From Oopsacas minuta (Eukaryota; Animalia; Porifera), in assembly GCA_024704765.1 (NCBI GenBank), contig JAKMXF010000066.1, positions 927,883-991,882 on the forward strand: a stretch of DNA of 64,000 nt. Reading direction: 5' to 3'. The translations under genes and the position numbers were made by a program. The notes under the pieces are model-generated. The model was not told where the DNA came from. It saw only the letters and a program-made list of their open reading frames with translations, and made no database searches. Positions 3,903 to 32,285 of the stretch are shown in pieces. Every line of letters begins with the position of its first letter. Positions within the stretch are counted from its first letter, which is position 1.

Positions 3903-4392
3903 CTCAACTGCCCTTCCTTCCTCTCATATTCTACCTCTTTTGTTTGAGGTTGACCGGGGCAATTGTGAAGTGTCTCAGACGTGTCCACTTACAATCAAGC
4001 TACTAAGCTGCAGCCTTGAGAACCTACCGCAGATGATTCATATATTTTATGCGATTATTGTAATACAAATTCCTGTAATAATGATAAAGATATTCGATAA
4101 TATACCCTTCAATATCTTGAGTAATCCGCTAACGTATTGATATCATAATTTAATTATACCATTTCTTTCTATTTACTGAGCTTTACCTTATGATCTTTGC
4201 TTTCTTATTATTTGTTATATGTTTACTTCAAATATGTCTAATCGATATTCATCTTATTTCCTTGCTTTTCTATCCTCTTGTACTTATATTAAATATGCAC
4301 AAACATGAAACTAGATAGTTATACTTTTTCTTAGTCTAAATATATGATATTCCATATGTCTGACAAATATATCTTGCAAATTTATATTGTTG

Positions 4393-5754: not shown

Positions 5755-5872
5755 TTCTGTAATTACTATATAAGTGCATAAGGTCTGAATACAAGGTCAT
5801 TGATTTATTATAGTCTTTATCAGTTTTAAACTCTCTATAACTAGTCATTGAATTCCTGTTTGCCTATTAGAT

Positions 5873-8800
5873 ATGAGTAGAATACTACTCTTACTTCTGT
5901 TTATCCATATTCTTATAAGTCTCCTCCTGGTTAATGGACAGATAATATTCGATAATGAACCATACAGAACTGACCTGAATGAAGAAACTCCAATAAACAC
6001 AGTTGTGCTGACAGTATCCGCTATCGACCTGAGTATTACATCTACTACTGGGATGTACTCTATAACATCAGATGAGTTCATCATTGATTCTCTTGAAGGT
6101 TCTGTTAGAACTAATTCGATTATCGATAGAGAGGAATCTGGTACTCCTTTACTGTTCGCATTTGATGTTACTTATGTATCTGATATTGGTAAGCTTATCA
6201 TAGATCAATTGTACTATTGATTATTTCAATGTTCTATTGCTATCAGGCTTATCTTAATTCTTATTTTCTATTTAGGTAATGTTGGCACATCTACCATTAC
6301 AATATCGATAAAAGATATTAACGATAATACTCCCTCCTTCACTAACTCCACTTTCTACATAACTATACCTGAATATACTCCAGTAGATACTATTATCCAC
6401 ATAGCTGTAGCAACAGATGCTGATACTGTGTCAATACAAGAGTCTGTGGATGGAAATGGCATCTCTGTGTTTAATTATACGATTGATTTTGGTAGAGTTC
6501 TGTACTATATTGTAGGAGGAAATGGAAGTAACTATTTTAATATTGATGTGGATTCGGGTGAAATCAAGGTTAGTTTACTAACTCAATTCTTAGAATAATT
6601 TACAGTTTATTGTTTGTATATTTTCTGCTTAGCAACTAAACTTCATAAACAATAGATATTATTATCAGGAATAGTACACCTAACTCCATGATTAGTAGAA
6701 CAGAAGGTCATTAATATATGAGTGATGCAGAACACTGATAAGATGTATTAGTTTCGAATTAGCTATGTATTATTGCATCAACCTTAGTTAGTTATTATAT
6801 TGAACTATTTCATTATTTAGACTATGGTTGGCGATATCGATTTTGATTCTATTCCCTCTCTAACACTTAATATCAGTGCACAAGACGGACCTGGCTTAAC
6901 TGCATACGCCTTATTAGTAATCACTATAGAAGATATCAATGATAATACTCCCATTATTATATATCCTAACTCTTTCTCTATTACACTGAGTGAGGCTGTT
7001 AGTGTAGATCTTATATTGGTAGAGAATATTACTAGTATGGATCTGGATCATGGATTGAATGCTGACGTCACGTAAGTTATATTATCCGTGCTATGTAATG
7101 ATTTTTGTCTATAATATATTACCTTAATTTAATTTAGGTACTCTGTATCAATATCAAATCAATCAGACAGCTTCTCTATAGATCCCACTTCCGGTAGAGT
7201 GGTACTAATATCACCTCTGGACAGAGATTTAGACTCTGTAGTATCATTAACAATACTAGCTACTGATGGAGGTACACTAGCTCTCAGTAGCTCGATTATT
7301 ATTACTATAATATTAACTGATGTAAATGATAACACTCCTACATTCTCTAATGATGTGTTTATGTTTGATTTGATGGAGGATATTGTGAATGGCAGTACTG
7401 TATATGAATTTATTGCTGTTGATAACGATGAAGGTTTGAATGGCACAGTTAGGCAAGTTGTTATACGAAATATAGTATCATAATATGTATTCAAATATGC
7501 CATTTATATTTTCAACAGGAGTATACATACATTTACGATCTATTCAATTTTATAAATTAGCTATAATGTGTTTCTACGTGAAAACCCTTACTGGTCAATC
7601 TATACCAATCAACCTAGACCCAAATGTTACTATAGAAGATGTGAAAGAGTCTATAGAAGAGAGTACAGGTATTCCTGTACTCTCACAGCGTCTGTTATTT
7701 GCCAGTCACGAGCTAGATGATGAATTAACTGTACAAGAGTGTGGGATTGTTTCCGATACTACTGTACACCTGAATCTAGAGCTCAGCGGAGGTGCGAAAA
7801 AGCGCAAAAAGAAGCAATATTCTACACCTAAGAAGAACAAACATAAGAAAAAGAAGGAGAAGTTATTAGCTCTGAAATTCTATAAAGTTGATGATAACGG
7901 TAAAGTTACTCGTCTTCGTAGAGAATGTAATCGTGAGGAGTGTGGAGCTGGTGTATTCATGGCAGCACATTTCGATAGGCAGTACTGCGGGAAATGCGGA
8001 CTTACTTATGTCTTCACAAAGGAAACTTAGTTGAATTTATAGCTTTATAGCTTAGGATTATTAGATTTGACTTTATTAGTTATTCGTTGATTACTATGGT
8101 ATTTCATTAATTGTAGAATTTGTATCCGGTACAGGAGTAGTTCTGATTACGTTATAATTCTGAATAGAAATTTATTTATTCGATTTATTTCGCAGGTATT
8201 CTCTTTCTCATTCACATTTCCACCTATCTCCAGATACTGGTGTACTCTCATTGATACAAACACTAGACAGAGAGACTACTGGAGAATATACCTTTGCTAT
8301 AATTGCATTTGATTTCGGTACTCCAATACCTACCACTGGTAGTGCTATTGTAAATGTAACAGTACTAGATGTTAATGATAATTTTCCTATCTTTAATTCC
8401 AGTTATTTTGAGTTACATATATTGGATACAGAAATTCCTATACTACTCATATCTACCGTTACAGCTCAAGGTATAATATTTGTATTAATATTTGTTTATA
8501 CTATTCGTATTTGCATTAATTATAATTGCTAGATAATGATATCGGGACAAATGGTGATATAACATATTCCTTCACACCAGACAGCACAAATCCATTTGCT
8601 ATAGACTCTATTACAGGAGATATAACGCTTACAAATAGTGTATCATACTCCCTGAGTAATGAATGGCATAACTATACTGTTAATGCTATGGACAGTGCTG
8701 CAGCTAGTGAACAGAGAACTGGCTTTACACAGTTATCTATCCGGGTAGGTTATTATATTTAATAATAATCCTATGGCTAGATGAGATCCTGAGTAACACT

Positions 8801-11800
8801 GTATGTTCTTATAGGTACACGAGCCAGATTCATCTCCTCCTGTCTTCTCTCAGAGTTCATACAACACTACAGTACCTGAGAATACTACTGTTAATACAGT
8901 TATACTGACTGTCACTGCTACTGACATAGACAGAGGTATAAATGGAGATATTAGATATTATATTGTAGAGGAAGATAATGCGTTCTGTTATAACCTCAAT
9001 GAATGTGGTATTGCTGGTACTCTTGGTGTTAATCCTATTACAGGGAATGTGATTGTTAGCTCTCCTCTGGATAGAGATATAAGGTATAGTTTAGTTTGTA
9101 TGTTATATGACGCAATATTTCTAATCATATTTCAATATAGGGAATCTCTATCATTCCAGATAATAGCATATGATGGTGGATACCCTGTAGCAATGAATGA
9201 TACCACTAACGTAACTATTTTCCTGTCAGATTCTCCAGACACTCCTCCACAATTTCAGTCATCTTCTATCAATGCTTCTTTACAAGAGAATATTCTACCA
9301 CCTCACTTTATAACTTCTATAGTAGTTACAGATCCTGATTTAGGAGATGCTGGGCTACTCTCATTGCAGATTGATTACTCTGCATTGGATGGTATACTGT
9401 TTATATTAAATTCTACTACAGGTGAGCTATTATAAGAGATTATATTCTCCTTTAATTATCTTTACTTGTATATGCTATTCAGGTGATCTATACTCTAATT
9501 ATACATTTGATCGTGAAGCAAGTGATTCCTACCAACTTTCAATAATTGCAATAGATTTCGCTCAAATTCCCCTTACTTCCTATCTTCTGGTTAATATTAC
9601 TATTCTAGATCAAAATGATAATTCTCCATTCCTTCTACCCAACTCTTTCAATAGAATTCTTGAAGCTAAGCCAATTGCTACAGTTGTAGATTCAAATCTA
9701 ACAGTACTTGATAACGATATAGGTTTGAATGCTCAACTTTCTTACTCAATCTTGAGTATTTTACCAGAGAATCATTTTACAATAAACAATAATACAGGCC
9801 TCTTGTATACAGATTTTGTATTAGACATCACGGTAATATCTTCCTATAATATTTGTATACTAGTTCAAGATAATACATTGCCTTATTATAATTTATCATT
9901 CTGTATTGAAATACAAGTATTGGATGGCAATTTTAACCCTCCGATATTCTCACGAACTCAGTACAATACTACTTTATTAGAATCTTCTCCTATTGGATTT
10001 GTGTTAATAGATTTGTTGGCAACAGACAGTGATTTCTCTGATGATAATAACCTCATTTTCTATTTTTTAAACTCTACTTTCCCTACCGAATTTAACAGTA
10101 CATTTTCTATTAACAATTTGAATGGCAGCATTAGTTTGATTGGAGAGATAGATCGGGAGTATATTCACGAAATTATTATTCCAGTTATCGCTATAGATCA
10201 ACCGCTATTTGATTTACCTAAATCAGCTGTTACATATGTTACAGTGTATTTAGAAGATGTGAATGAATTCCCTCCTTATTTCAATACTACAAATGCTAGC
10301 ATAATTATATCAGAAGGAGTTCTACCAAATACTCTAATATTCAATTTGTTAGCTGCTGATAATGATGCTGATACTCCTAATAATGAGATTAGATATTCTA
10401 TTGCTCCCTCCCCGTATTCTTATTGCTTCTATGTAAATGAAATCACTGGAAATGTAAGTCTATTTATCTTGTGAGAATATTCGTATTAATTATCTGTTCT
10501 TAATTATTTTGTAGGTATACACTCAGACAGTGTTAGACCGCGAAACAGTACGATCTCTATCTCTTACATTCTATGCTTCAGACTTGGGTATTCCATCCCT
10601 AAACTCTACATTTATTCTATTTATTAACCTTTCAGATATTAATGATAACTCTCCTCAACTCTCAAATACCACTCTATACTCAGCTGAGAATCAGCTGTCT
10701 CCTTATACAATAGATTTCCTACAAACAGTAGATAATGATAGAGGAAATAACGGAACAATATACACAATGTTCTTACAAGATAATTTGTATAATTTCACAC
10801 TGAATAACGTTACAGGAGAGCTAATATCTTTTATAACATTTGATCGCGAAGATACACCATTTTATAACTTAACTGTAGTCCTAATTGATTCAGGAATACC
10901 TCAGTTACAATCTGTTATACACATTATTATAATTGTGACAGATGTTAATGATAATCCACCAGTATTCATACAAGAATCATATAAGGTATTTGTACGAGAG
11001 GACACAACACCAAATACATTCATTATGTCTGTAACAGCTACTGATTATGATATTAACACTAATGCTATTATATCATACACAATTGGTAGTCAAGATTTCT
11101 TTCAGATTGAGTCAGATACTGGGAATGTGAGGTCAATTGAGTTTCTAGACTTTGAATCTGTCACTGAACATGTTCTGCTAGTATACGCTACTGACGGTAT
11201 ATTCATTGAGAACACAACATTGACAGTATATTTGATTGATGTTAATGATAATCCTCCTGTATTCATACTTGGGTACCAGTTTACTATTAAGGAATGTGCT
11301 TCAGCACATACATATCTTGGTTCAATTGAAACTACTGACATAGATTCATATGAGAATAACACATTCACTGAGTATACGACTGATTCACAGTATTTCTCTA
11401 TACATAGTGAGTCCGGTCTGCTTAAAACTTTGCAGGCATTTGATCGAGCTATTCAAAAGCAGTATATTATCACGGTTATAGCGAATAATACATTAGCAGA
11501 GTTCCCGCTATACTCTGTGTTGGATATTTATATCTTTATTGAACCTGTAGCTGATAGTCCAAAATTCTCTGAGCAATTACAAAACATTGAAATTAATGAA
11601 GTTACACAAATCGGTGCTCTTATATACACATTTCAAGTGCTGGATTATCCTCACGATAGTTTAGGTGTTTCATATTCTATTCAGGCTGGGAATATTGATA
11701 ACCAGTTCTATCTTAACAGTTCTACTGGGGGATTGTTTCTACAGGAACAATTATCTTACTATAAACAGCCTCTTTACGCTCTGTCTATTGTTGCTATTGA

Positions 11801-17800: not shown

Positions 17801-20800
17801 GAAAATTGTCCTACATGATGCTAATGCATTTTCTCTATCATTCAGTCAACCTTCCTTCTATTTTTTAATACCAGATAACTCTAATGTAGGGAGTATAGTA
17901 GCTGACGTCACTGGTTATAATATTGATATATTTGATATTTCTACTAACACTGAATCCAGTCAATTATTCTCAATAACAGCTGATGGGGATATTATATTGC
18001 TGGATTTTCTAGATCCACAGACTGTCTATTCCTCTAATTTATTCGCTATGAACTCACAAGACACGATACAGACTGTAATTACTATTGAAGTATTTGCAAC
18101 ACAGAATAATCCCCCGATATTCTCATCATTGAATTACTATGTACATCTGTCAGAAGCTTTACCAATAGCTACAACCTTCCTAACAATATATGCTATAGAT
18201 AATGACGTCACTGATCAAGGTGTAAGCATTTCTTATACGATTTCCGATGGAGATGAGTTTGCTTTGTTTTCTATTGACAGTCAAACTGGTAGACTTTCAA
18301 TAGCCGAGAAAATTGACAGAGAAATAACTCCACTATTTAATCTTACTATACAAGCTGCTGGTAATGGAATAGGTATGACGTATGTAGTAATTATTATTGA
18401 TGACGTTAATGATAATGCTCCAGTATTCTCAGAAGACGTTTACCGTGCTACTGTCGTATCCGATATACCTGCAGGTACTTTGATACTACAAGCTATAGCG
18501 AATGATAATGATGCGGGAAGGAACAGTGACATATCTTATGCAATTGTATCACAGCCCATCCCCAGCTTGTTTGCTATAGATCCTTACAGCGGTGATATCA
18601 GACTGAATAGTAGTCTTATTGTGTACGATTACAAGAGCTATGCTTTCTACATTTCAGCAACAGATAACGGTCTGCCTTTACGACTAACTACAGAAATACA
18701 GGTGTATTTTACTATTGATCATCCCAACCTATATGATCCTGTGTTCACTACTCTATCTACTAATAGTACTATCCCTGAGACAACTCAAGATGGAACTCTT
18801 ATAGCAATATTCTATGCATTTGATCTTGATACTAACACCAGTGATGGAGTATATTACTCTTTATCTAATTATGAAAACCTTCCATTCTCACTGAGTAATA
18901 AGGGAGAGTTATACTTGACAAGTACGCTAGATTATCTGCAAGCTATAGTGTACAGGTTTGTAATTACAGCAACAGATAGTGGTACTCCTACAAGAAATTC
19001 GACGTTAGATTTTGCAGTATTCGTTGAGGATATCAACAACCATCTTCCTATCTTCTCACAGGATTCATACGAAATGATTCTCTCTGAGAACTATCAAATA
19101 CAAACTCCCTTTATAACAATCTCTGCTACAGATTTGGATGCAACCTCTATAACATATATAATCTCCCTAAATAGCTATATAGAGAATGGCGAGGCTATCT
19201 TCTCTATTAGCTCTGATACAGGAGTTATGTCGTTAGCTATTCCATTAGATTACGAAACCCTGGTGACACATGAATTGCTGATCACTGCAAGAGATCAGGG
19301 CTACTCTATTACTCAATTCAACAGCGTAACGCTTACAGTTATGGTACAAAATGTGAATGATAATCCTCCTATATTTTCCCCCACCACAAGCATTACAGCA
19401 ATCGTACCTAGACTATCTATGGCTGGTATATTTGTTAGCACAGTATCTGCTACTGATTTGGATAGCGTATCTATTCTATACTCTATTCTGTCTGGGAATG
19501 GAGATGGTTTGTTTGCTGTTGACGGGGAAACTGGCGATGTTACACTAGCTAGAGATGTTGGGGCATTTGCTGATAGTTTGTACAATGTGCAGTTGTTAGC
19601 TTTTGATGGAGAGTTGAGTTCTACTGGCTTATTACAGATTGAGATTAGTGATAATGCAAGTTATTGCTATGGTAAGTTTGCAGTACATTTACTACTCAGA
19701 TGAACATTGGGTAAATTCAATTTTATGATTATCTGACAAGGTGGCCGAGTGGTTAAGGCGATGGACTGCTAATCCATTGGGCTCTGCCCGCATGGGTTCG
19801 AATCCCATCTTTGTCGTAAACCTTTTGCTCGGCTTCAGAATAACCCCAAATATATTGTAATTATGAAACTAAGGATGCTACTTTTTCTACTTTTCTTATT
19901 TTCTAATTTAGATGGCTTATGTACTGATGTGTTACCTAGCGTGATCTGTACTACAGCTGATTGTACTACTTGTCCTCTTGACTTTGTAAGTTCTGGTATT
20001 TTTCATGTACTTCAATGTTTCTTTTATCTTTTGTTTCCCTCTTAGATCTTATCAACTACATCTACTTTTTGCTTCCTTTATACCTGCTTCTCTTCAGATG
20101 AGGTACAATAGACTATCATAGCTCTAACATTATACTGTAATTGTTTGTTTATATATTTCATTTAGTATCTTTGTGGAGAACAACAACCAGGCTGTATATC
20201 CTACTCATTACAATGCAATGGAGTTTGTAGTTTAAACTACTCGTTATGTGCTGCAGACAATCTCTGTTATCCAAACACTATTTCATCATTACCATGTGAT
20301 AATCAGAACACCATATGTCTTAATGGTTATATTCTAGTTCAGCTTTCTGATCAATCTCGTGTATGTACTCACCCTTCAGATCTACCAGCTATGGGTCAGA
20401 TCTGCAATACCCTCGGGAAAGTATATTGTGATGAGATTGATTCTTGTCAGAATATTCAAAATAACCCGTCTCTATGTCAACTGTGTTCTTCCCAAGAATT
20501 TCAGTGTCCAGACACAAATGAGTGTGTATCTTCTTCCAAAATGTGTTGTAGTACTAGTGACTATTTCTGTAACATAACAGATTCATGTCTATCAGCTGAT
20601 CTCTCATGTCCTCCTGTATCCTCTAATATAGCACCAACAATTCCTTCTAAAGCTATTCTACTTCCCTCCAGCTCCCTAGGATCCGTCATAGGATTACTAT
20701 TAGGCGATGGAACAGCTGTAGGAGTAGACACTCAGATGGAAGAGGTTGCGATTGCTATTATCTGTCAGTTCCCTGTAGATAATCTATCAGGTTATTGGCA

Positions 20801-23800
20801 GTATATAAAGTGTAGAGATGGTCCTACAGATGTGTATGGCGCCTGTAGTGTACTAGAGTATCCGTGGATAGATTTACCAGTCACAACCTCAATAGATAAT
20901 GCGTTTATCCTCCCTCCCAATTATCGTATTAGATTTGTCCGTATGCAGACAGTACTTGAGGGTAGTGTATGGTTACGAGCTCATCTCTGGGACGGATTTA
21001 ATGAAGCTGTAGAGACTGATTCATTGTCTGTAGTACGTGAGGCGGATCCTCATTTTGCATTTCTTCCTCCATTCGAATCTAATTCTGCTTTCAGTCAGGA
21101 ATATTTATATTTTGTTTCTATTTTCAATCCGGTTACTTCTTTCCCAGCTTTTATATCCCCCAATATAGTATCATTCCCAGATATAGAAGAAGATTATTCT
21201 AGTTTACAGAATAATGGTGTGTTGTTGAGTGAGCTGTTGGGTGGAGTGTACTCTCCCAATCTGTATGTGATTAGCACTACAGTTGTATTGGGTAAGTACA
21301 CAAATACTTTGCAATCAATTCTTCATTATATAACTTTACTTCTGTTTAGGTCTCCCGCCATCAGAAGCTACAGATATACAGAATAGTTTACCATCATCTT
21401 CACTGACATCTTATTTCAGCTCTGTAGTATCCACTAACATAATCAGAAGTAGGAGATTATCTGTTACTGCTGGATTCTTGTTAGCTAGTGTTAATGATGA
21501 CCAAGGGGTGTGGCAGGTAATTTATAGCTACTGTAGGTTGTTCTTATACCAGAAGATAAATAATAATTGTATCCTCTAATTAGGTGACAGCTACTGGTAG
21601 ACAATCAGACTGGTACCCGATCACTTCAATACTCGACAATACAAACCAATTATTATATATACCACTAGAATCAAGAGTTAGATTCATACCGAATGAACAC
21701 ACACACAGTACTGCTACAATATCGATACATCCATGGGATGGTACTAGCCAGGGCTTATCAATGCAAACTGTAACAATTCGTGACGTAACCTATCAAGTAG
21801 CTAATGTGTTACCTACAGCATTCGCATTAGGAGATGCTAATAGCATGTCACTACATATAATCAGTGCCCCAGATAATCCAGTAGTTATTATTAATGAGTT
21901 ATTACTACCTACTATACCATATTTTATACAATATCGGAGAGATAATGTGTTTGTTATTGAGTTAGAGATGAGTGTTGATATGTTTAAGCAACAGCAGGAT
22001 TTGTTAAGTAATTATTTTGCTGTTTTATTCCACTCAACTGTAAGCATTTTATACTTTGAGCCTCTGGCTAGTATCAGGTAAGTTTGCACAATAATAGCAT
22101 TTACAAGTACTTTATTATTGCAATATTTTAGGTGTTTAGCTAGCTTCCGAGTAGAAGAACTACAGCTATCACTCTCTGATATATCTACTGAGCTAGAGCT
22201 AAGTAAAGATGTGTTAGTTAGCTTAGGATTTAATATAACACAAGTTACACAAGGTAAGTTAATTAAATATAACAAATAATGAGGTAATTGTTTATACTTG
22301 TATCATATAATCAATTAGATACATTTGTGGGACAGGGACATGGCTGCTTTGATTCCTCTCTGTATGCTCCTAACACCGGAGAATCTGCTGGAGTAATAGC
22401 TAATACTAACGGATATGATGGAGATGATGATATTATGGGATTAGCAGTAGTTCAGTATACCGGTGATATGCATGGAATATGGCAATACTATAGGTCAGAT
22501 GTACCTCCAAGTGTATGTAACTCTCTGGTAGTTAACTGGATAACATTACCTGATTCTATTTCTGAGACGAATGCTTTCCTGCTACGTCCATCAGATTGTG
22601 TTAGATTCTCTCCTCACCCTCAATCATACTGGCTAATCAGTACAGCTCCAACTCTAACAGTGAAGTTATGGGATATTTCTGTAGGGAGTATTACACAGGA
22701 GAATGATATGTATCATGCTAATACAGATCCTTATACTACAACTGTACACTCTACCATTAATCCTATAGGTTTGTTAGTTATATAAACTTACGTAGATACA
22801 CGTCATCTTAACTTTTTATATTCACAGGGCTATTCAGTACAGATACTATACGAGTAATAGCACACAGACAAGACTGTACTGGATCAGCTGATTCTAATAA
22901 TGTGTATGATGCATGCTGTATCTGTGGAGGGTCTGGTACTACCTGTATGGGATGTAAGACTAATGTATCTATAGCAGTACAGTATGATACATGTCGTGTG
23001 TGTGGAGGAGATGATTCTACTTGTGCAGGATGTGATTTAGTACCATTCTCTTATTCACAAGTTGATGAGGGAAACATTTGTAGGTAAGAACGTTTTATAT
23101 CAGATCTATCCTATGAGATTTATATTATTAATATTTTAGGTCTGATTCATCCAACCTCGCTCCTGGTCAAGTAACAACATACTTTGACTGTGAAGATACT
23201 CCCTTTGGGCTAGCACTTGTAGATGATTGTAATGCTTGTACAGAGGGAGATTCAGTTAAGGAATACAATTATCTAAAGTGAGTTATTCCCATTCATATTA
23301 CCTTTAAATGAATATTTAATTAACACTATTATACTCATTAATAATACAAACTCTATATAGCAACACTCTCAGTAAATGGAATAATAATAACAGTATTATT
23401 TAACCTTTCTTTTATGACTGTGAATATGGGTCTGTCATCAGCTGATTGTTTCCAAGTTTCAGCCATCAAACTATACACATCATCCGGACAACCATCTGGT
23501 TGTAATGGTATTTCACCTCCTTGTATGAAATCTACAATCTCTTCGTTAGTATTTTCCTGCCATGGCTTGCGACCTAACGTCCATATTTCATACAGCGTCA
23601 TTCCAAATGCCCAAACATCCGATTTCTCTGAAAACCTATTATATAAAACAGACTCAGGCGCGCTCCAACGTAAAGGTATCCTCCCGCCTTTAGATCTGTA
23701 GTAATCATCTGATCTTAGGTCTCTTGACATACCGAAATCAGCCACTCGACAAGACATATCATTAGCTATTAGGATATTCCTTGCTGCCAAATCACGATGG

Positions 23801-26800
23801 ATGAATTTCTTCATTGCTAAGTGCTCCATACCATCAGCAATATCTCTACAGAATCTGAGTAGCAGCTTTTGAAGTTTGCTAGCGTTTTGGTAGTTATATT
23901 CCTGTGAATGACATAACTGCATTAAATACTGCCTTAACTCAATGTTAAGTAGCTCTGTAACAATCATATGAGGCTGTACTGTAGTGACGACACCAATAAA
24001 TTTGAGGATGTTTGGATGATCGAATTGTGAGAGAATCGCCGCTTCCCGAATAAACGCAACTTTAACATCGTTATTAACTTCTTCCCGTAACGTTTTTATA
24101 GCAACTTTTAAATCCCCGTACTTACTAGTGTAAACTGCATGACATATTACTCCGAAATTTCCTGTAGCAAACACGTCGCCTATCTTAAGATTATCCAATG
24201 ATATTTCATATGATCTAGGTCCTATACTGTTAGATAGCTCAGCTAGATTATAGGGTGGGTCTATGTATTCTAACTGCTCTCTCTTCCTATCTCTGAGTAG
24301 TTTGTTTATAATGTCATTCTCTTCTGATATTGTTTCGAGGTTACTTGATTGAGTAACTAGCTTATGGTAGAAGCTAACATTACTACCATGGCTTGCTGTA
24401 AGATCCTCCTGTTGTGTTAGAGGGATAATGTTGTTGTTTTGAAATACTGTGCAATTTCCCTGCTGTGATGTATTATTCCCTGAATATATACAGTTGTTAC
24501 TGCTAAGCTCAAAATAGTTATTCTCTCCTTGTCTATTCAATGAATGATGTCCTATTTCCGGACCAGGGACTACCTCATATATCCTCTCACTATGTTCCAT
24601 CCCCTGATCTACTACGTTAGAAAAATACGTGGAATCTGCTACTGCAGATCTGTCGAATGTTTGGTTAGGGCTGTTCATTAAATTATTTGATTCCGTCTGT
24701 AAGGTTTGAATCCGTCTGTTAGTTCTCTTATATCTCCTCATTTTCACGTATGTACGGGTTAAGCAACAAATTAAGATTACTATTATCACTATGGATAGCA
24801 GTAGGAAAATTATGAAAATTATCGAAAGGATTATCCGTACTGCTTTTCGTCTCTCACTTCCTGTACAGTCATCTTCTATACAATCTTGTGTAGGAAATTG
24901 AGTGCTATTAGTTTGTGTAGAGTTCATAAAGACTGTTGTGTTGCTTGTTAGATTAGTGGTAGTATTTGTATAGGATTGTGGAGTGTAAGTACTAGCATTT
25001 ATTGATATAGGTAGAGTTGTGCTTACGTTCTCTGTAGTTATATTAGTTGGTGAAATTTGTGTTGTATTATTTTCCGGACCAAGTGTTGTTGTTATTGTTG
25101 CATTTGTTGCCATCATAGTTGTTGTGCTCCTAGTTTCACAGCTATTCCCTGAATACCCATCCGTACACACGCATCTCTCTTCAAAACAGAATCCTCCGTT
25201 AATACAGTCATCTTGACATAAACAGGTTTTGAATTCATTCACTCTTTCACACATCCCTAATGCTTCACACTGAGCCATGCTTGCGCATTGTTGACACTGT
25301 ACCTTACTAACCAGCTGACATGCTGATAGTTCCTTTGTGTGATTACATTGTGTTAGAGAAGTTTCATTACCAATACAATCTAAAGCTGATAATTTCAATA
25401 ATCCATCACATAGCAGTGGAGTTATTGTTATATCTCTCTCTTTAGCTTCCAAATATCCAAATCTTTTGCAGTATACTTCATTATTTTGATATATCCCATC
25501 ATTCCATCCAGCTGCACAGATATATGTCCATCCTAGATATATTCCATTATTATAACATACTTGTATTACGTCATGAGGTAGTCCTATATCAATGGTTCGT
25601 TCATCACCTTCCCTACTGCAGATTTCAGCATTATTTAACACACAAATAGTGACTAGAATTGTCAATAAGGTAATCAATCTTTTAAGCGACATTCCTTCAG
25701 TTTAGAATGAATAATCTTTTCTAATCTTTTTATACTTGTTATTTTTGGATGCTTATTTTCTGAGAATTAGACGCCTTCATTTTTAGTTAATTAATGGTCC
25801 AATTATCGGTCAATATATTTTTCATGATACATAGATATATCAACATACATCCTTGTGATTGCATTTTCCTCAGAAATACCAAATTACTATTATGTGATAG
25901 AATATATTCTTCCAATGAGGATTACTTTTTGGTTAATTTTTATCATTAATTTGGTTGCTTAACTTATTCCAATTACAAAGATCTTCTATGCTTACGTAGA
26001 TTTCTATTTAGTATTTCTAAGCACTTTCCGTGATACTTCCAATCTGTACAGATTATCCTATTTCATAGAATAATACATTATAAGTCTGTGTGTGTGTTAT
26101 ACATCATCCAATTACTGATTATTTCTATGTATTTTCTCGAATTCTGTCCCACAGGGATTGCGATGGAGTATGTGACGGTACAGCTTCTATTACTTCCTGT
26201 GGGTTATGTACTGGTGGTACAACAGGATTACCAGTAGATTACCCACTAGATTGTAGAGGTATTTGCTTTGGTAACTATACTACAGATTCTTGTGGAGTTT
26301 GTCAGCTAATTTCTAATCCGATTGATTACAGAGATTGTTCAGGAGAATGTTTTGGCAATGCAAAGGTATGGAGCCTTGCGTATTATTTAATCACATGTAA
26401 TTCATTTTTTTCTATTAGATCGATCAATGCGGTACTTGTTACGGAGGCTCATCAGCTGTTCCATCAGCGGATTCACTATTAGACCAGTGTGACATGTGTG
26501 GAGGAGACGGCACTAGTTGTATTGGATGTGATAATACTATTGGTTCTGAGGTTGATAATTGTGGAGAATGCGAGGGAGATAATTGCGATTGTATAAAGGT
26601 AAGAATAATATCTTACGTATAGTGATCTTTTTATAATAATCTACTATAGGTAACTCAAGTCTATCCTACAAGCATACTATCAGGAGAGCAGACCTATGTG
26701 ATAGTGGATGGAGCTGGTTTATTCTTCAAACCTGATCCTCTATCTCCATCAACATATGATAACGGATCATATCTTCCTTTATGTGGCGGAATCAGACAAT

Positions 26801-29800
26801 ACCCTGGATTGGATATATTCGTACCAGTTAGTTGCATATTCTCTGATAACGATGCTAAAGAGTACAATCTAGCTGTAGAATTTTATATAAATCAGTCAAG
26901 AATAGTCTGTAAAACTCCATCCGAGGTTCTTATGGGCGATTATTTCGTGCTAATTCAATTTGAGGATATTCTTAATAATATTCCTATCCTACGCACACCA
27001 ATTAATACATCTTTGCCATTGCGGTTTTTCGATAATTCAGTACATCAGCTGTCTGTTGTAGCTGCTAGTTTGAGTGAGAATTCTATTGGTATTGAAACAG
27101 AGTTATTTTTCGATGTTATTAGCTTTGAGTCTTTTCCCCAGCTATCTTGTATTATAAATTCCTTTGATTCTTGTGGAGATATATACTCAAATCCTTATAT
27201 AGTATCTGCTTTGTTTATCCATTCAGGGAAAATAATGTGTATAATCCCACCAGCTGATTATCCCTGTCAGGTGTCTATCAGTATTAGTATTAACAACCAA
27301 ATTGCGGGTATTATTCTACAGAGAGATTTCCCTTTCTCTTTCTTTAACCCAGAACCTGTTGTTATACAGTGTAAGTTGGAGGAAAATCTAAATTCTATTC
27401 TGATACAGTTTGATCACCCATTGTATGTGACTGATGTATCTAATGGATGCTCTGCGTTATTTGACAGCTCTACATTAACTGAATTAGCATCATCTCTGTG
27501 TTATTTCATCGGTACTAGCAATGAGTATATTCTAATACAATTATCTACTGATGCTATGCTTACTTACAGTAGTGAACTGATTTGGAAAGAAGACAGTATT
27601 TATGCTATTTCACAGACCAATTCCTTCCCATTAACTACTCCTACAAAAATACAATTACCTGACTCTATACAGAATCCTATGGCCATTATACTGGGCCCTG
27701 AAATACTCCCATTAACCGGTAGTACATACTTTACTGCTCATTTATCATATCCTTGTGGGTATAAACCGTTTATATATGTTTGGGATATCCGTGCTTCTAG
27801 CTTGGATTTTGATATCTCTGATGCTTCACTGAAGTTATCTGAACTAGATTCTACTGCTGATACTCTTGTATTAGATTCTAGTGATATTATTACAGGAGAG
27901 GATTATACATTGATTCTCTCTATTATTAATTCCTTCGGTATTTCTAGCCAAGTTGAGAAACTACTCACCAAGAGTATACATATAACTTCTCCTGTCATTT
28001 TAGCCTCAAACCCAGTAGATAAGTTTAATTCAGTGCAAGATATACACTTATATGTACTGGTAGATTATCCCTCTAATGATATTGGAGGTTATTCACTTGC
28101 TTATGTATGGAAATTGGAACAAATTCTACCATCAAATGAAGCGATAAGGATAGATCTGAATGATTTGATTTCTAATTCAGGTACTCTATTACTCCCATCT
28201 GGGTTCCTGGAACCTAATTTCAACTATGTAGTTTCTGTTACAGTCAGTTTTATTGAATTATCGGGATCTGAAACAGTTTCTAAGGATATTTTTGTTGAAA
28301 CACAATCTCCTATCTCAATTATTGAGGGTGGAAATAGACAGATTGGGTTTAATCAGGTCTTAATGCTTGATGCTACTAATTCAATACAACATTATGGATT
28401 ATATGATTGGGAATGTTTTAATACAGATACAATGCTACCCTGTACACATGCTATTAATGGTATAACTAGTGTTGTAGAGCTAAATACCTCATCTCTGATA
28501 CAGGAAATACAACCAAATACTCTAGGTAAGTAATGTGCAGTATTGCCAAAGGTTACATGCGGTTTCGAGAGTTTCTTATCCATGGTTTGTTTTGCATCTT
28601 AGTTTACGTCATATTTTATCTAAACAATGAAATCTCAACATTTTCACAAGCCCGACACGTTATGCATATTAACTTGGTTTAACATTATATTGTAACAAAA
28701 TTTGTAATCTATCCACGCATTTACTCAAGTAATAAACTTACAAATTGATCGGTTGAATTTTATAGCGGGTACATGTCAGCCAAATCATTTATTCTCCGAA
28801 TTACTGCCATGAAATATTTATTTGTTTATTTCAATTTGATTCTTTGATAAATCAAATTATCACCCATTTATATGCAATACCTGACCAATTGACCTTTACA
28901 TACAAGTACAGATTATTGCTTGAATTGCCTACGTTTGTATTGGTGGATATTTTATAACCATATTCATTCTCTATAGCAATTGGTAGCTCATATGTATTCA
29001 TACTAACTCAATCCTTATCCTCTCATGCTGTAACTATATCTATACAGAATAATGACGTCATAGGTTTATATAATAGTCCTCTGATGTATGAGCTAATACA
29101 GGATGATGTTATAGTGATATCCTCTAGGCTGTATGGATATGAGGATATTGTTAGTGCGTATTGGCAGTGTGAACAGATTGAAGGTAAATTTCATTATTCC
29201 TATATTTCTATAGATAAATTTATATTTTAACAACTATTCGTTAGGTCAAGGCTTTATAACTATCTCTTCTCTGCCGATTCAATCCGTGTATCTATCAAGT
29301 ACACAATCTGTTCCGTTGTCCAGAACTCAAGAAACAGTTATATACAGGTCTCTATGGAATGAGCTGAATCTATTCCTGCCAGTATCAGCTGTTTCGTTCT
29401 ATCAGAATTACACATTCAGTATAAATGTCAATAATTACAAATCTTCAATTACTCTTTATAGTAATACAGCTCCTAAATCAGGTCAACTTGTGTTAAGTAA
29501 ATCTAACGGACAGCCTTTGACCAGTGAGATTCAATTGGAAGCTAAAGACTTCTGTGATTATAATCCTACTTATGAATTCTATTACATTATCGATAACTCA
29601 ATCAAACTTATCATACAGCCACGCTCTGTACTATCATCTGCTATATTTATTCCTCCTCTCATTAGTACAACACAACAAACCTCCACTACTATATTCGTAG
29701 ATGTGTATAGCACAGCTGGAAAGTTTGTGAGTACTTCTAACTCTTTTAGAATTGATATATTACAAGGAAGTGCTACCTCAAAGATTAGCTCGCTGCTGGA

Positions 29801-32285
29801 AATAACAGATAAACTAATATCCAATCAGGAATATAATAAAGTTATATCACGTGTATCTACACTGATTATAAGCCATAATTATAATTCAATACATTTCCCT
29901 CCCAACTCAACAGAAAATCTATTCACAATGCTGAATACATTATCAACAACACCAACTATCCCTGCATATTCAAATGCACTATACTTAGATCTGATCAGAC
30001 ATATTAAAGTTGATTCATTGCCATCAGATCAAGTGAATAATTATTTGGAATATCTACTCAGAATAGCGAGGGATGTCTTTTATACTTTAGAAAATATTAA
30101 AGTTACTCCCTCGCATAATTTTCCCTCTCCAGTTATAGTACCGTATGACAAGGCTATTGTATTGCAATTTATTGAGATTATTCGCGAAATTCCAATCACG
30201 TCACAACTAGATGATACTCTATATTTCACGATTTTGGATGAGATTTCCAAAATATTATGTTTGACCTCATTCTTCGGTCATCAACCTTTGAATATTCCAT
30301 ACTCAAATCTGGGATTATATTTTACCAACGATTATTTATATTCTGAAGATAACTATTGCATTAGAGATAGGTGTGAAATGAATTATATACAATTTCCATT
30401 GAATTTAGCAAAAGAATATTTCAATTGGGAATGTAATACAAATTCTCAATACAGATGTAATGGAGTTTGTGTAACTTTATTTTCCGTGCTTTTTGAGAAT
30501 TTAACCGAAAATTCAGTTGTTGATCTCAGCCAAACAGCTCAGAATACTATTGATAATTCAAATCAAACTAAGACAGGATTCTATTTCAATTACAACAGTA
30601 CTTCAATCGTTACAGAAACATTTGTATTAAGTATGAAGAATCCTATTACTGGTATCAATATTGAATTATCTGGAAGTGGAATATCTGTTATTTTTGGCTT
30701 GAATCAGACCCAGTTAATTGGAGATGGATTAATTCTATGTTTGTATAAAGAAGAACAATCAACTTATTGGGAAGTAGAATCTTTCTTTCCAATACAAACA
30801 ATCACTAACAGTATACATTGTGTATACACTCATTTCACTCAATATACCGTGGCTAGACTCAACTACTCCCCTATAATAACACCAGCCCCTACAACTATAA
30901 CTCCTACTCCTACTAACTCTACTACTAGACCTCCTGTAGTTACTACTGTAGCTCCTGTGGTTCAAGAGTTCCCTGTTGGAATAGCAGTTGTACCAATCAT
31001 CATACTAGTGTTCGTTATTCTAGGTGAGTTGGTATAAGGCCGAGGTCCTGAGTTCGAGTCTCACTCCTGACATATTTTTGTTGCTCATTAACATTACTTA
31101 TTTATTTACAGGTATTATAATTGTCCTTTTAATATTATTCTGTCTGTGGAAACGCAAGAAATCCAGATTAATGGAATTGGTATCACCCTCTGAAGAGAAG
31201 TTATCAGAAGAATCTGTTGAAGTCAGTGACAGAATGTACTTCAGTATTTGTACCATCTCTAAATCAGGACAGGAGGATCTAATTGGTAAACTACAGTTCC
31301 CTCCTTCCTCACGACTGAGAGAGATTAGAAATTCTTTGTTAGAATCTTTCCCAGAAAATTTTGAGAAGAAAGCGTTTTGCTTTTTAACTAAACAAAGAGA
31401 ACGGGTAAATATTTCAAACAATCTTAGTCATTGATAACTCTAACAATTGTACCAGAATTGTTCAGTTAAAACCCAAAGAGTACTATTTGATATGTTTTAT
31501 ACATTAACAATGTGTTTAATGCGTAGGCGAAATGCCATCTTATTATTAGCTGCTCAATATAATAACCTAATTACCCAATCAGCCGTAGTTCTAACTTTAT
31601 TTATATATAATCTGTATTGAATTGATAGATTGATCCTGGTACAGAGAATAACCACTTCTTACGTATTGTCTATGACTCTGAAGTATTGGTTAGATTTGTT
31701 GATGCTAAAGACGAACAATTCAGGACTGTATTCTGTTGGTGTGGTAAGATAGCATTCTTTGAGTGCTCCAGATGTCATGGACAAGCATACTGCTCTGCAG
31801 AATGTCAGCTGTCAGATTGGGGTTTACATAAGAGTGAGTGTATACTACTTACAGAGAGGAAGAAGAGGTAATTATATAACACTGTTAAATTAGCTTATTA
31901 ACCATATATGGTATTCTTATTCTTTATAGGCAAGATGTATTGAGGAAGACACAGAGTAGTGTATTACGTACTAGTGTAGATCTGAGACAGAAGAGAGAGT
32001 TAGATCCACCGCAGATTAGTCCCAAATTTGATACTTGGAGAGGTAATATACAATTTATTGTGTTTATTTATGAATCCTTTGATTACATCTTATCCCACTG
32101 TAGCATTTCTACAAAGTCAAGGAGCGCCATCTGATCTATCTTCTTCATTTCCAATTCGTGAAGAACCTAAACTCAGCATGACAGATACGCAAACTGAAAT
32201 TCCTCGTATCTCTGTTGCAGCAGCTCGTCCTCTACCTCCTATTCTAGGGACTATACAGCACCCACTCAATAAACCGGCTCCTTAA
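5873..32285 (+). CDS. Giant single-pass cadherin / polycystin-REJ / GPS-like / MYND protein, about 6767 aa, 28 exons
   Basis: Exons 5873-6188, 6276-6568, 6821-7071, 7138-7452, 8196-8470, 8533-8744, 8815-9083, 9141-9421, 9483-10453, 10515-19671, 19912-19985, 20046-20102, 20166-21291, 21350-21516, 21584-22077, 22132-22253, 22319-22768, 22828-23083, 23140-23277, 26155-26365, 26419-26598, 26650-28525, 28977-29183, 29245-31023, 31112-31404, 31629-31867, 31930-32042, 32104-32285. Total 20304 nt; all junctions phase-compatible. Signal peptide; repeated DRE/DYE, DxD and DxNDNxP motifs over about 4100 aa (roughly 35-38 EC-sized units); TM segment [27 protein letters not shown] followed by KRKK. Confidence 0.85.
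7566..8030 (+). CDS. RPS27A: Ubiquitin-like domain fused to ribosomal protein eS31/S27a, 154 aa, intronless, nested sense in cadherin intron 4
   Basis: The 76-aa UBL ends in LSGG and is followed by [40 protein letters not shown]...[23 protein letters not shown], the canonical eS31 zinc ribbon. The ATG at 7566 aligns with ubiquitin Met1. Confidence 0.96.
19735..19816 (+). tRNA. tRNA-Ser(GCT): tRNA-Ser(GCT), nested in cadherin intron 10
   Basis: 82 nt. Acceptor stem GACAAGG/CTTTGTC, D-loop TGGCCGAGTGG, anticodon arm ATGGA-CTGCTAA-TCCAT, long variable arm, GGTTCGAATCC, discriminator G, TTTT terminator at about 19823. Confidence 0.98.
23353..25692 (-). CDS. Receptor tyrosine kinase (SRCR-like, EGF, Thr-rich stalk, TM, Eph-like TK), 779 aa, intronless, nested antisense in cadherin intron 19
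   Basis: Signal peptide; SRCR-like [33 protein letters not shown]; [23 protein letters not shown]; hydrophobic TM; kinase motifs [36 protein letters not shown]. Confidence 0.95.
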   Translation of the reverse strand: MSLKRLITLLTILVTICVLNNAEICSREGDERTIDIGLPHDVIQVCYNNGIYLGWTYICAAGWNDGIYQNNEVYCKRFGYLEAKERDITITPLLCDGLLKLSALDCIGNETSLTQCNHTKELSACQLVSKVQCQQCASMAQCEALGMCERVNEFKTCLCQDDCINGGFCFEERCVCTDGYSGNSCETRSTTTMMATNATITTTLGPENNTTQISPTNITTENVSTTLPISINASTYTPQSYTNTTTNLTSNTTVFMNSTQTNSTQFPTQDCIEDDCTGSERRKAVRIILSIIFIIFLLLSIVIIVILICCLTRTYVKMRRYKRTNRRIQTLQTESNNLMNSPNQTFDRSAVADSTYFSNVVDQGMEHSERIYEVVPGPEIGHHSLNRQGENNYFELSSNNCIYSGNNTSQQGNCTVFQNNNIIPLTQQEDLTASHGSNVSFYHKLVTQSSNLETISEENDIINKLLRDRKREQLEYIDPPYNLAELSNSIGPRSYEISLDNLKIGDVFATGNFGVICHAVYTSKYGDLKVAIKTLREEVNNDVKVAFIREAAILSQFDHPNILKFIGVVTTVQPHMIVTELLNIELRQYLMQLCHSQEYNYQNASKLQKLLLRFCRDIADGMEHLAMKKFIHRDLAARNILIANDMSCRVADFGMSRDLRSDDYYRSKGGRIPLRWSAPESVLYNRFSEKSDVWAFGMTLYEIWTLGRKPWQENTNEEIVDFIQGGEIPLQPDGCPDDVYSLMAETWKQSADDRPIFTVIKERLNNTVIIIPFTESVAI
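31033..31072 (+). pseudogene. tRNA 3'-half relic (tRNA-Ile(TAT)-like) or tRNA-derived SINE fragment in cadherin intron 24
   Basis: TATAAGGCCGAGGTCCTGAGTTCGAGTCTCACTCCTGACA resembles the anticodon-to-3' part of eukaryotic tRNA-Ile(TAT), with a T-arm TGAG-TTCGAGT-CTCA. No 5' half or D-arm is present. Confidence 0.5.

What the first reader, a model, noticed from the sequence alone, without database searches (positions are those of the whole stretch)
5873..32285. ~6770-aa cadherin-polycystin chimera: EC repeats + REJ + GAIN/GPS-like + single TM + MYND
Twenty-eight phase-compatible exons join, in order: about 35-38 cadherin-sized repeats, Cys-rich and unknown modules, an IPT-like segment, a REJ module ([10 protein letters not shown]; IEGGNRQ..LMLDA..YDWEC; [18 protein letters not shown]), a GAIN/GPS-like region, a PTT stalk, one TM and a cytoplasmic zinc finger. 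Known large cadherins (Fat, Dachsous, Flamingo/CELSR, hedgling, lefftyrin, coherin) do not have this architecture, and polycystin-1 relatives have 11 TMs and no ECs. It is a candidate new class of mechanosensing or adhesion receptor.
Basis: partly seen in the sequence, partly recalled or inferred. Interest (0 to 1): 0.92.

Follow-up and report, generated by a model that had tools for sequence, protein, structure and literature searches.

The report
Giant sponge cadherin with REJ-GAIN-MYND end
This is one real 6,767-residue membrane protein of the glass sponge Oopsacas minuta: about 39 cadherin repeats joined to a polycystin-type REJ/GAIN module, one membrane helix and a MYND zinc finger. The genome annotation wrongly splits it into two genes, but the same architecture was already reported in 2013 for the sponge Amphimedon, so it is not a new class.

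Summary
Window 5873-32285 (+) encodes one 28-exon, 6,767-aa type-I membrane protein. In order it has: a signal peptide, about 39 contiguous cadherin repeats, Cys-rich and unassigned modules, a TIG-like region, REJ, a GAIN domain with a GPS-like H-F/T site, a P/T stalk, one TM helix, a ubiquitin-like segment and an intact MYND finger. RNA-seq contigs confirm the critical 23277->26155 splice across a nested antisense tyrosine-kinase gene, plus four more junctions. The window is Oopsacas minuta (GCA_024704765.1), whose NCBI annotation splits the gene into 5,209-aa and 1,698-aa proteins. REJ scores just below Pfam's cut-off here but passes in orthologues. An AlphaFold model of the juxtamembrane region matches PKDREJ, PKD1L2, sea-urchin suREJ1 and crystal GAIN domains.

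The novelty claim does not hold. BMC Evol Biol 2013;13:76 drew Amphimedon XP_003386184.1 ("dachsous") with EC, VSP, IPT, REJ and MYND domains. I found the same exon order in at least six other ENA assemblies. It is therefore the Oopsacas member of a conserved, functionally unstudied gene family. The additions here are the GAIN/GPS assignment, the corrected gene model and the nested genes. The mechanism (adhesion with a force-sensitive GAIN joint and MYND-mediated signalling) is inferred, not shown.

The parts
5873..32285 (+). Whole coding region: 28 exons, 6,767 aa. Exons: 5873-6188, 6276-6568, 6821-7071, 7138-7452, 8196-8470, 8533-8744, 8815-9083, 9141-9421, 9483-10453, 10515-19671, 19912-19985, 20046-20102, 20166-21291, 21350-21516, 21584-22077, 22132-22253, 22319-22768, 22828-23083, 23140-23277, 26155-26365, 26419-26598, 26650-28525, 28977-29183, 29245-31023, 31112-31404, 31629-31867, 31930-32042, 32104-32285.
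   Evidence: Model built and refined. It equals P0007 without the ribosomal-protein exons, followed by P0001 from residue 8. Five junctions were seen in RNA contigs.
5873..5938 (+). Signal peptide (aa 1-22)
   Evidence: N-terminal hydrophobic segment, one of only two in the protein.
5939..19658 (+). About 39 contiguous extracellular cadherin repeats (aa 23-4109), spread over exons 1-10
   Evidence: Pfam Cadherin at E=0. The self-built repeat HMM gives 38 hits head to tail plus one divergent unit.
7453..8195 (+). GC-AG intron 4, which holds a same-strand ubiquitin-like/eS31 gene
   Evidence: Sequence read. Cadherin repeat 4 (aa 352-453, 96 bits, full length) spans the 7452/8196 joint. P0007 wrongly fuses the PF00240/PF01599 exons into the cadherin.
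19671..20684 (+). Cys-rich region 1 (aa 4114-4330, exons 11-13)
   Evidence: 25 Cys in aa 4101-4300. No Pfam match.
20685..22767 (+). Conserved modules of unknown fold (aa 4331-4943)
   Evidence: No Pfam match. 28-31% identical to the ~600-aa ORF and 34-37% identical to the start of the ~300-aa ORF of loci L004-L007.
22768..26598 (+). Repeated D-x-C-G-x-C-x-G-D Cys motifs (aa 4944-5205, exons 18-21). They continue across intron 19. This is the 'VSP' region of the 2013 paper.
   Evidence: ADAMTS_CR_3 22.7 bits. Motif run read.
23278..26154 (+). Intron 19 (2,877 nt, GT..AG)
   Evidence: RNA joint 23277->26155 at depth 174. The orthologous ORF break falls at the same residue in L004-L007.
23353..25692 (-). 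Nested 779-aa receptor-type tyrosine kinase gene inside intron 19. It is not part of the cadherin.
   Evidence: PK_Tyr_Ser-Thr 262 bits. The same position and strand are seen in L002 and L003.
26650..27669 (+). TIG/IPT-like beta-sandwich region (aa 5206-5545)
   Evidence: No Pfam TIG hit in the window itself. The orthologous ORF in L004 scores TIG 27.4 bits against a cut-off of 20.9. Atlas neighbours carry TIG/Big domains.
27670..29753 (+). REJ module (aa 5546-6069, exons 22-24)
   Evidence: REJ scores 23.1 bits here and 61.2, 34.4 and 30.1 bits in orthologues. Fold matches to the PKDREJ, PKD1L2 and suREJ1 REJ-GAIN region.
29772..30872 (+). GAIN domain. Helical subdomain A is aa 6076-6240 and beta subdomain B is aa 6248-6442.
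   Evidence: AlphaFold model with pLDDT 71.9 and pTM 0.67. Foldseek hits to GAIN crystal structures 4dlo, 8oek, 8vy2, 4dlq and others, E=2.6e-8 to 2.7e-5, probability 1.0.
30819..30854 (+). GPS-like motif [12 protein letters not shown] (aa 6425-6436). The candidate cleavage bond is F6430/T6431.
   Evidence: Alignment. Distant orthologues have H-L/T or H-L/S. This is the last strand of the GAIN model.
30873..30968 (+). Pro/Thr-rich stalk (aa 6443-6474)
   Evidence: Sequence read. Low pLDDT in the model.
30969..31146 (+). Single TM helix (aa 6475-6504), split by intron 31024-31111 and followed by a K-R-K-K stop-transfer
   Evidence: helix at model residues 584-619.
31237..31700 (+). Conserved cytoplasmic ubiquitin-like (beta-grasp) segment (aa 6535-6614)
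   Evidence: Invariant P-S-x-R-L-R-E-x-R and K-x-F-x-F-L-T columns. AlphaFold core pLDDT 75-88. Only weak Foldseek hits, to ubiquitin-like domains, E about 1e-3.
31725..31841 (+). MYND zinc finger with all eight Cys/His ligands (aa 6623-6661)
   Evidence: zf-MYND 35.4 bits. Conserved in P0004, P0005, L005 and L007.
31842..32285 (+). C-terminal tail (aa 6662-6767) and stop codon
   Evidence: Identical to P0001. Conserved in the spliced orthologue P0004.

Best explanation
**Shown.** Window 5873-32285 is one gene of the hexactinellid sponge Oopsacas minuta. It encodes a 6,767-aa type-I membrane cadherin with this order of parts:
- signal peptide;
- about 39 EC repeats;
- Cys-rich and unassigned modules;
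- TIG-like region;
- REJ;
- GAIN with a GPS-like H-F/T site;
- P/T stalk;
- one TM helix;
- ubiquitin-like segment;
- MYND finger.

It belongs to a gene family with the same exon order in other ENA assemblies, probably sponges. By its published description, that family includes Amphimedon XP_003386184.1.

**Inferred.** The EC array mediates calcium-dependent adhesion. The polycystin-type REJ-GAIN unit forms the membrane-proximal joint. If it self-cleaves at H-F/T, it would hold a roughly 6,400-aa N-terminal fragment non-covalently on the stalk-TM-tail fragment, and tension on the cadherin array could then shed it. The cytoplasmic ubiquitin-like plus MYND module would couple the receptor to partners that carry PxLxP-type motifs, as MYND fingers do in ETO, BS69 and DEAF-1 (general knowledge). 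There is no 7TM or 11TM body, so any signal must pass through the single-pass C-terminal fragment.
For: - **One transcript.** RNA-seq run X4 has a 15,269-nt spliced contig that crosses 23083/23140 and 23277/26155. Four further junctions are seen. The modelled mRNA from the ATG to 23277 is 15,224 nt, against 15,239 nt in the contig.
- **Domain continuity.** The Cys motif repeats run across the 23277/26155 joint.
- **Comparative support.** In L004-L007 the ORF break lies at the same residue, with gaps of only 130-1,045 nt and no kinase ORF called in them.
- **Annotation artefact.** P0001 starts with an invented six-residue exon and has no signal peptide, although it is an ectodomain.
- **Domain assignments.** Cadherin; MYND; REJ in orthologues; REJ-GAIN fold; Atlas neighbours carry REJ/GPS; GPS motif conservation; tail conservation.
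- **Organism and published orthologue.**; literature.
Against: - **REJ and GPS profiles.** REJ is below Pfam's gathering score in this protein, and Pfam GPS (PF01825) does not match.
- **GPS motif.** It lacks the second Cys of the canonical C-x-C-x-H-L-T. It has Phe at -1. In close relatives it reads H-N/T or L-F/T (P0002, P0004), so self-cleavage may be lost in hexactinellids.
- **Models.** The GAIN model has moderate confidence (pLDDT 72, TM 0.42-0.53 to hits). The tail model is poor (pLDDT 56).
- **Possible second isoform.** Exons after 26155 have about twice the depth of the upstream contig, so an extra shorter isoform is not excluded.
- **Amphimedon orthology.** I could not retrieve the Amphimedon protein, so orthology rests on the paper's description.
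- **No functional data.** None exist for any member of the family.
Confidence: 0.7

Rival explanations
1. There are two independent genes, as in the NCBI annotation: a 5,209-aa secreted or truncated cadherin and a 1,698-aa REJ/MYND protein. The observed joint would be a minor read-through splice.
For: The annotation GCA_024704765.1 calls them separately, with a kinase gene between them. Depth downstream of 26155 (about 380-416) is twice that of the upstream contig (174).
Against: The spliced path carries depth 174, against 25 for the only other path into exon 20. P0001 begins with a six-residue invented exon and has no signal peptide. P0007 would have no TM helix. The Cys-repeat module is cut in half at the split. 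In L004-L007 the two halves are adjacent ORFs broken at the same residue.
Confidence: 0.05
2. It is the sponge orthologue of Dachsous (or Fat), as the 2013 paper proposed, and it works in a Fat-Dachsous planar-polarity pair. The REJ-GAIN-MYND part would be a lineage-specific addition.
For: The 2013 paper (PMC3620549) found that Drosophila Fat and Dachsous both hit XP_003386184.1 best, and that Trichoplax Dachsous favours it. The best non-sponge hits of the EC exon are Fat4 and Fat-like cadherins at about 27% identity.
Against: The paper's own tree did not place the protein with either group. There are no LamG/EGF domains. Cadherin_C_2, the only cadherin cytoplasmic-tail family to appear, is not significant (13.5 bits, E=0.12, cut-off 31.5). 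EC-repeat similarity alone does not resolve orthology among giant cadherins.
Confidence: 0.15
3. The GAIN domain here is a non-cleaving structural spacer. The protein would be a purely adhesive or matrix-binding cadherin, and its tail would only anchor it.
For: The -1 and -2 positions of the GPS vary among hexactinellid relatives (H-F, H-N, L-F). The second GPS cysteine is replaced. From my own knowledge, several adhesion GPCRs have intact GAIN folds that do not cleave.
Against: Distant orthologues keep the canonical H-L/T or H-L/S (P0005, L005, L007). Oopsacas keeps His at -2 and Thr at +1. The tail is the best-conserved non-EC part between the distant lineages (32-35% identity), which argues for a signalling or docking role.
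Confidence: 0.35

Closest known systems
Amphimedon queenslandica XP_003386184.1, called 'dachsous' in BMC Evol Biol 2013;13:76 (PMC3620549)
   Same: It was drawn with many EC repeats followed by VSP (Cys-rich), IPT, REJ (aa 5114-6215), a TM helix and MYND. The order and positions match those here: Cys repeats at aa 4944-5205, TIG-like at 5206-5545, REJ at 5546-6069 and MYND at 6623-6661.
   Different: It comes from a different sponge class (demosponge, against hexactinellid here). The paper did not recognise a GAIN/GPS domain or the ubiquitin-like segment, and it filed the protein under Dachsous. I could not fetch the sequence to align it.
Polycystin-1 family ectodomains (PKDREJ, PKD1L1, PKD1L2) and sea-urchin suREJ1 (Q26627)
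   Same: The REJ beta-sandwiches are followed by a GAIN domain with a GPS just before the first TM helix. These are the best fold matches, at E=5.8e-15 to 5e-13.
   Different: There is no PLAT domain, no 11-TM body and no channel-like part. There is one TM helix, and about 39 cadherin repeats lie upstream. suREJ1 is the nearest in topology (single-pass, from my own knowledge), but it has EGF and C-type lectin modules rather than cadherin repeats, and no MYND.
CELSR/Flamingo (ADGRC) adhesion GPCRs
   Same: Cadherin repeats and a GAIN domain occur in one polypeptide. The CELSR1 GAIN structure 8vy2 is among the PDB hits.
   Different: CELSR has 9 EC repeats, EGF/LamG/HormR domains and a 7TM body that reads the tethered agonist. 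Here there are about 39 EC repeats, REJ instead of HormR, one TM helix and a MYND tail.
Fat and Dachsous giant cadherins
   Same: They have very long EC arrays, one TM helix and a huge exon. The best non-sponge sequence hits of the EC exon are Fat4 at about 27% identity.
   Different: There are no LamG/EGF domains, no significant match to a cadherin cytoplasmic-tail family (Cadherin_C_2), and the REJ-GAIN-MYND end is extra.

Membership tests
Cadherin superfamily | Tandem extracellular cadherin repeats of about 105-110 aa with calcium-binding linker motifs | tested here: met
   PF00028 at E=0, 1013 bits, 23 stretches in one exon. There are 24 D-x-[ND]-[DE]-x-x-P linker motifs and 38 head-to-tail HMM hits.
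REJ module (PF02010) | The sequence profile matches at or above Pfam's gathering score | tested here: inconclusive
   The window protein scores 23.1 bits against a cut-off of 25. The aligned orthologous ORFs score 61.2 (L004), 34.4 (L003) and 30.1 (P0003) bits.
REJ module (PF02010) | Fold and position: beta-sandwich repeats directly upstream of a GAIN domain, as in polycystin-1 relatives | tested here: met
   Foldseek aligns model residues 70-545 to PKDREJ 433-968, PKD1L2 762-1268 and suREJ1 806-1334, at E=5.8e-15 to 1.6e-13. All 23 top AFDB cluster hits that carry a name are REJ, PKD1-like, PLAT or GAIN/GPS proteins, and latrophilins follow.
GAIN domain | Helical subdomain A plus beta-sandwich subdomain B, whose last strand follows the GPS | tested here: met
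   The AlphaFold model has helices at residues 182-346 and strands at 354-548. PDB GAIN structures 4dlo, 8oek, 8vy2, 8vti and 4dlq match at probability 1.0, with E down to 2.6e-8.
GAIN domain | GPS motif C-x-C-x-H-L-T/S with two disulfides (Pfam GPS, PF01825) | tested here: inconclusive
   There is no PF01825 hit. The motif is C-V-Y-T-H-F/T: the first Cys, the His and the Thr are kept, the second Cys is replaced by Tyr, and Leu is replaced by Phe. Distant orthologues have C-x-[YF]-x-H-L-[TS].
GAIN domain | Autoproteolysis at the GPS | not testable with these tools
   This needs protein chemistry.
Polycystin-1 family | PLAT domain and an 11-TM body after the GPS | tested here: not met
   There is only one TM segment after the GPS. 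There is no PLAT or PKD_channel hit.
Adhesion GPCR (including CELSR) | 7TM domain directly after the GAIN domain | tested here: not met
   A single TM helix is followed by a roughly 260-aa cytoplasmic tail.
Dachsous / Fat | Family-specific conserved cytoplasmic domain (and LamG/EGF for Fat) | tested here: not met
   There is no LamG or EGF. Cadherin_C_2, the only cadherin cytoplasmic-tail family to appear, scores 13.5 bits (E=0.12, cut-off 31.5). The tail is instead ubiquitin-like plus MYND.
zf-MYND (PF01753) | C4-C2HC ligand pattern and a profile match above the cut-off | tested here: met
   35.4 bits against a cut-off of 22.7. All eight ligands are present and conserved in orthologues.
Sponge EC-TIG-REJ-MYND cadherin (Amphimedon XP_003386184.1 type) | Collinear order: giant EC exon, Cys-rich/unknown modules, TIG, REJ, TM, MYND | tested here: met
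   The window protein aligns collinearly with the consecutive ORFs of L004-L007, whose Pfam content is Cadherin / - / - / TIG+REJ / REJ+MYND. Identity with the Amphimedon protein itself was not tested.

The most novel reading that the evidence does not exclude
This would be a sponge-wide family of single-pass cadherins that uses a polycystin-type GAIN domain as a force-triggered release point, in a Notch-like way. Tension on the 39-EC array would shed the N-terminal fragment. The remaining stalk-TM-tail fragment would then be processed or re-localised, and its ubiquitin-like plus MYND module would deliver the signal, for example to co-repressor complexes. That would be a route from adhesion to signalling distinct from both adhesion GPCRs and polycystins, and possibly close to the ancestral use of REJ-GAIN with cadherins.
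Probability: 0.12. Interest if true: 0.8.

Novelty: new member of a known kind. Interest (0 to 1): 0.45.

Why it matters
- **Annotation.** The result corrects a mis-annotated locus in the only published glass-sponge genome. One gene was split in two, and a nested ribosomal-protein gene was fused into it.
- **Conservation.** The cadherin plus REJ plus MYND architecture was previously only drawn for Amphimedon and filed under Dachsous. It has a close counterpart in a second sponge class (Hexactinellida) and in several more distant assemblies of unknown taxon.
- **GAIN domain.** The architecture contains a bona fide GAIN fold. GAIN domains are otherwise known in front of 7TM (adhesion GPCR) or 11TM (polycystin) bodies. 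A conserved single-pass cadherin with a GAIN joint and a MYND tail is a natural system for asking what GAIN did before it was coupled to those bodies.
- **Open point.** It also bears on how early animals linked adhesion to signalling. No function is known for any member.

Tried and rejected
- **Gene model.** A codon-trained DP finder first skipped Cys-rich exons and invented exons in the kinase intron. A looser scoring swallowed the nested ribosomal-protein gene. I rejected both after the RNA joints, the repeat-HMM continuity and a comparison with P0007 and P0001.
- **Sequence searches.** Both large juxtamembrane exons found nothing useful in PDB sequences. HMMER of exon 24 against 1.84 billion representatives gave only 5 hits, so this region diverges fast. 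A profile search (A2) added only close hexactinellid-type fragments.
- **Internal repeats.** Self-BLAST of aa 4133-5900 found none at E<=1e-3. The 'three copies of an adhesin-like module' noted by another reader was therefore not reproduced at that sensitivity.
- **Alignment.** A combined alignment that included the TIG/REJ ORFs misaligned them (A3), so I did not use it for folding.
- **Tail.** The AlphaFold model is poor, and its Foldseek hits to ubiquitin-like domains are weak. The Atlas search of the tail gave no relative.
- **Literature.** The Nichols 2012 cadherin paper is not held in the library. The Oopsacas genome paper does not discuss this gene.
- **Contig length.** The length of the 15.2-kb RNA contig fits my 5' model (a start 15 nt before the ATG). 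It cannot exclude the P0007 variant, because only its last 170 nt (141 aligned plus the 30-nt overhang into exon 20) were laid on the window.
Full report
**Locus and organism.** The window is AT-rich (about 33% GC) with short introns. An exact-match look-up of the 1,698-aa protein P0001 places the locus on Oopsacas minuta GCA_024704765.1, contig JAKMXF010000066.1. The neighbours are an ADF-H ORF and a Rab-like GTPase ORF upstream, and a fibrillar collagen gene on the minus strand downstream.

**Domains found by profile search.**
- Pfam finds Cadherin at E=0 (23 stretches) in the 3,057-aa ORF at 10530-19700, and further repeats in the upstream exons.
- A repeat HMM built from the protein's own clean repeats tiles aa 23-4109 head to tail, about 39 repeats.
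- zf-MYND scores 35.4 bits.
- REJ scores 23.1 bits, just under the cut-off of 25.
- An ADAMTS-type Cys motif scores 22.7 bits in exon 18.
- Only two hydrophobic segments exist: the signal peptide and one TM helix, which is split by a short intron.

**Gene model.** I built the model in four steps: a splice-aware DP search, manual reading of doubtful junctions, the RNA joints, and a comparison with the public proteins P0007 and P0001. The final model has 28 exons and 6,767 aa.
- Intron 4 is GC-AG and holds a same-strand ubiquitin-like/eS31 gene. Cadherin repeat 4 reads through the 7452/8196 joint at full length (96 bits), so the ribosomal-protein exons fused into P0007 are an annotation error.
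- Removing a 57-nt intron inside the former exon 7 merges two split repeat hits into one 70-bit hit.
- The exon 23/24 joint follows P0001. It also fits the conserved W-x-x-x-x-x-x-G ends of the orthologous ORFs.

**One gene or two.** The NCBI annotation calls a 5,209-aa and a 1,698-aa protein, with a 779-aa tyrosine kinase on the opposite strand between them. Four lines of evidence say it is one gene.
- **RNA.** One of four runs from the same sample (X4) is RNA-seq. It holds a 15,269-nt contig whose last part is exon 18, then exon 19, then 30 nt of exon 20. That gives joints 23083/23140 and 23277/26155, both GT..AG, at depth 174. The only other path into exon 20 (23302-26184, unspliced or kinase antisense) has depth 25. 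Joints 26365/26419, 26598/26650 and 28525/28977 are also seen.
- **Domain continuity.** The D-x-C-G-x-C-x-G-D motif repeats run on both sides of the 23277/26155 joint.
- **Annotation artefact.** P0001 starts with an invented six-residue exon and has no signal peptide.
- **Comparison.** In four more distant assemblies (L004-L007) the homologous ORFs break at exactly this residue, with gaps of only 130-1,045 nt and no kinase ORF called in them.

Depth after 26155 is about twice the mean of the long contig. That fits 3' bias, but an additional short isoform cannot be excluded.

**REJ and GAIN.**
- REJ passes Pfam's threshold in the orthologous ORFs, at 61.2, 34.4 and 30.1 bits, and TIG passes in L004.
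- The protein-language-model Atlas places both large exons next to REJ and REJ+GPS clusters, at 0.91 and 0.86.
- An AlphaFold model of P0001 residues 826-1445 was built from a 12-sequence alignment (pLDDT 71.9, pTM 0.67). It shows a beta-sandwich, a helical bundle, a second beta-sandwich whose last strand follows the GPS-like motif, a disordered P/T stalk and a TM helix.
- Foldseek matches the crystal GAIN domains of BAI3, BAI2, CELSR1, latrophilins and CD97, with E down to 2.6e-8 and probability 1.0.
- It matches the REJ-GAIN region of PKDREJ, PKD1L2, PKD1L1 and sea-urchin suREJ1 even better, at E=5.8e-15 to 5e-13. AlphaFold DB cluster hits are all REJ, GAIN or GPS proteins, with best TM 0.53.
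- The GPS motif reads C-V-Y-T-H-F/T here. Distant orthologues have C-x-[YF]-x-H-L-[TS]. Some close relatives have H-N/T or L-F/T. The fold is therefore secure, but cleavage competence is open.

**Cytoplasmic tail.** The tail is the best-conserved non-EC part between Oopsacas and the distant orthologues (32-35% identity). It has invariant P-S-x-R-L-R-E-x-R and K-x-F-x-F-L-T columns, followed by the MYND ligands. The AlphaFold model is weak overall (pLDDT 56). It gives a beta-beta-alpha-beta...beta core at pLDDT 75-88, whose only matches are ubiquitin-like domains at E of about 1e-3.

**Distribution.**
- Giant EC exons 50-61% identical to this one occur in six ENA assemblies. Two of their contigs also carry the TIG/REJ and GAIN exons, with a nested minus-strand kinase in the same place (L002, L003).
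- About 30%-identical EC ORFs of 3,400-4,250 aa occur in many more assemblies. The four I opened have the order Cadherin, about 600 aa, about 300 aa, TIG+REJ, REJ+MYND on one strand.
- The taxa of these assemblies are not given.

**Prior knowledge.** PMC3620549 (BMC Evol Biol 2013;13:76) drew Amphimedon XP_003386184.1 ('dachsous') with EC repeats plus VSP, IPT, REJ (aa 5114-6215) and MYND. It reported the aa 4900-6300 region in two Monosiga EC-rich proteins and in a 2,603-aa Branchiostoma protein. Its own tree placed the protein with neither Fat nor Dachsous. No other paper in the library mentions this architecture, and the Oopsacas genome paper does not discuss it.

**Verdict.** The architecture is unusual but has already been published for another sponge, so I rate this a new member of a known kind, though one that has never been studied. 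The contributions here are the GAIN assignment, the conserved ubiquitin-like plus MYND tail, the evidence for conservation beyond Amphimedon, and the three nested genes. The mechanism (adhesion with a GAIN joint and MYND docking) is inference from domain knowledge. The identity and architecture part of the explanation is close to certain. The mechanism part is perhaps one in three.

Noticed in passing
window 19734-19817 (+): A tRNA-Ser (anticodon GCT) gene lies inside intron 10 of the cadherin gene (19672-19911), on the same strand.
   Followed up: partly
window 7453-8195 (+): A ubiquitin-like/eS31 ribosomal-protein gene is nested on the same strand in a GC-AG intron. The NCBI protein P0007 fuses its exons (PF00240, PF01599) into the cadherin, adding 138 residues (134 of them from the nested gene).
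   Followed up: yes
window 23353-25692 (-); L002 218-2656 (-); L003 2050-4401 (-): A 779-aa intronless tyrosine kinase gene lies antisense inside intron 19. A kinase ORF sits in the same place and orientation in two related assemblies, but no kinase ORF is called there in the four distant orthologous loci. The nesting therefore looks conserved within the hexactinellid-type group.
   Followed up: partly
window 33100 to about 36000 (-): A fibrillar collagen gene (Collagen repeats plus the COLFI C-propeptide) lies on the minus strand just downstream. It accounts for the GC-rich, strongly skewed block at 34-38 kb.
   Followed up: no
window 4348-5751 (+): An ADF-H/cofilin-like ORF is followed within 30 nt by a Ras/Rab-type GTPase ORF in the same frame. 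It ends 120 nt before the cadherin ATG, so the intergenic spacing is very tight.
   Followed up: no
L005 2354-4268 (-): In one distant orthologous locus, ORFs with weak PKD_channel and mucolipin-ECD matches lie about 6 kb upstream of the giant cadherin, on the opposite strand. This is probably coincidence, but it is a polycystin-2/TRPML-like neighbour.
   Followed up: no
window 24493-24513 and 26451-26468: DNA-run contigs (X1, X2) of 1.9-2.7 kb touch the window only over 18-21 nt and run on unlike it. They look like short chance or repeat matches rather than structural variants.
   Followed up: no
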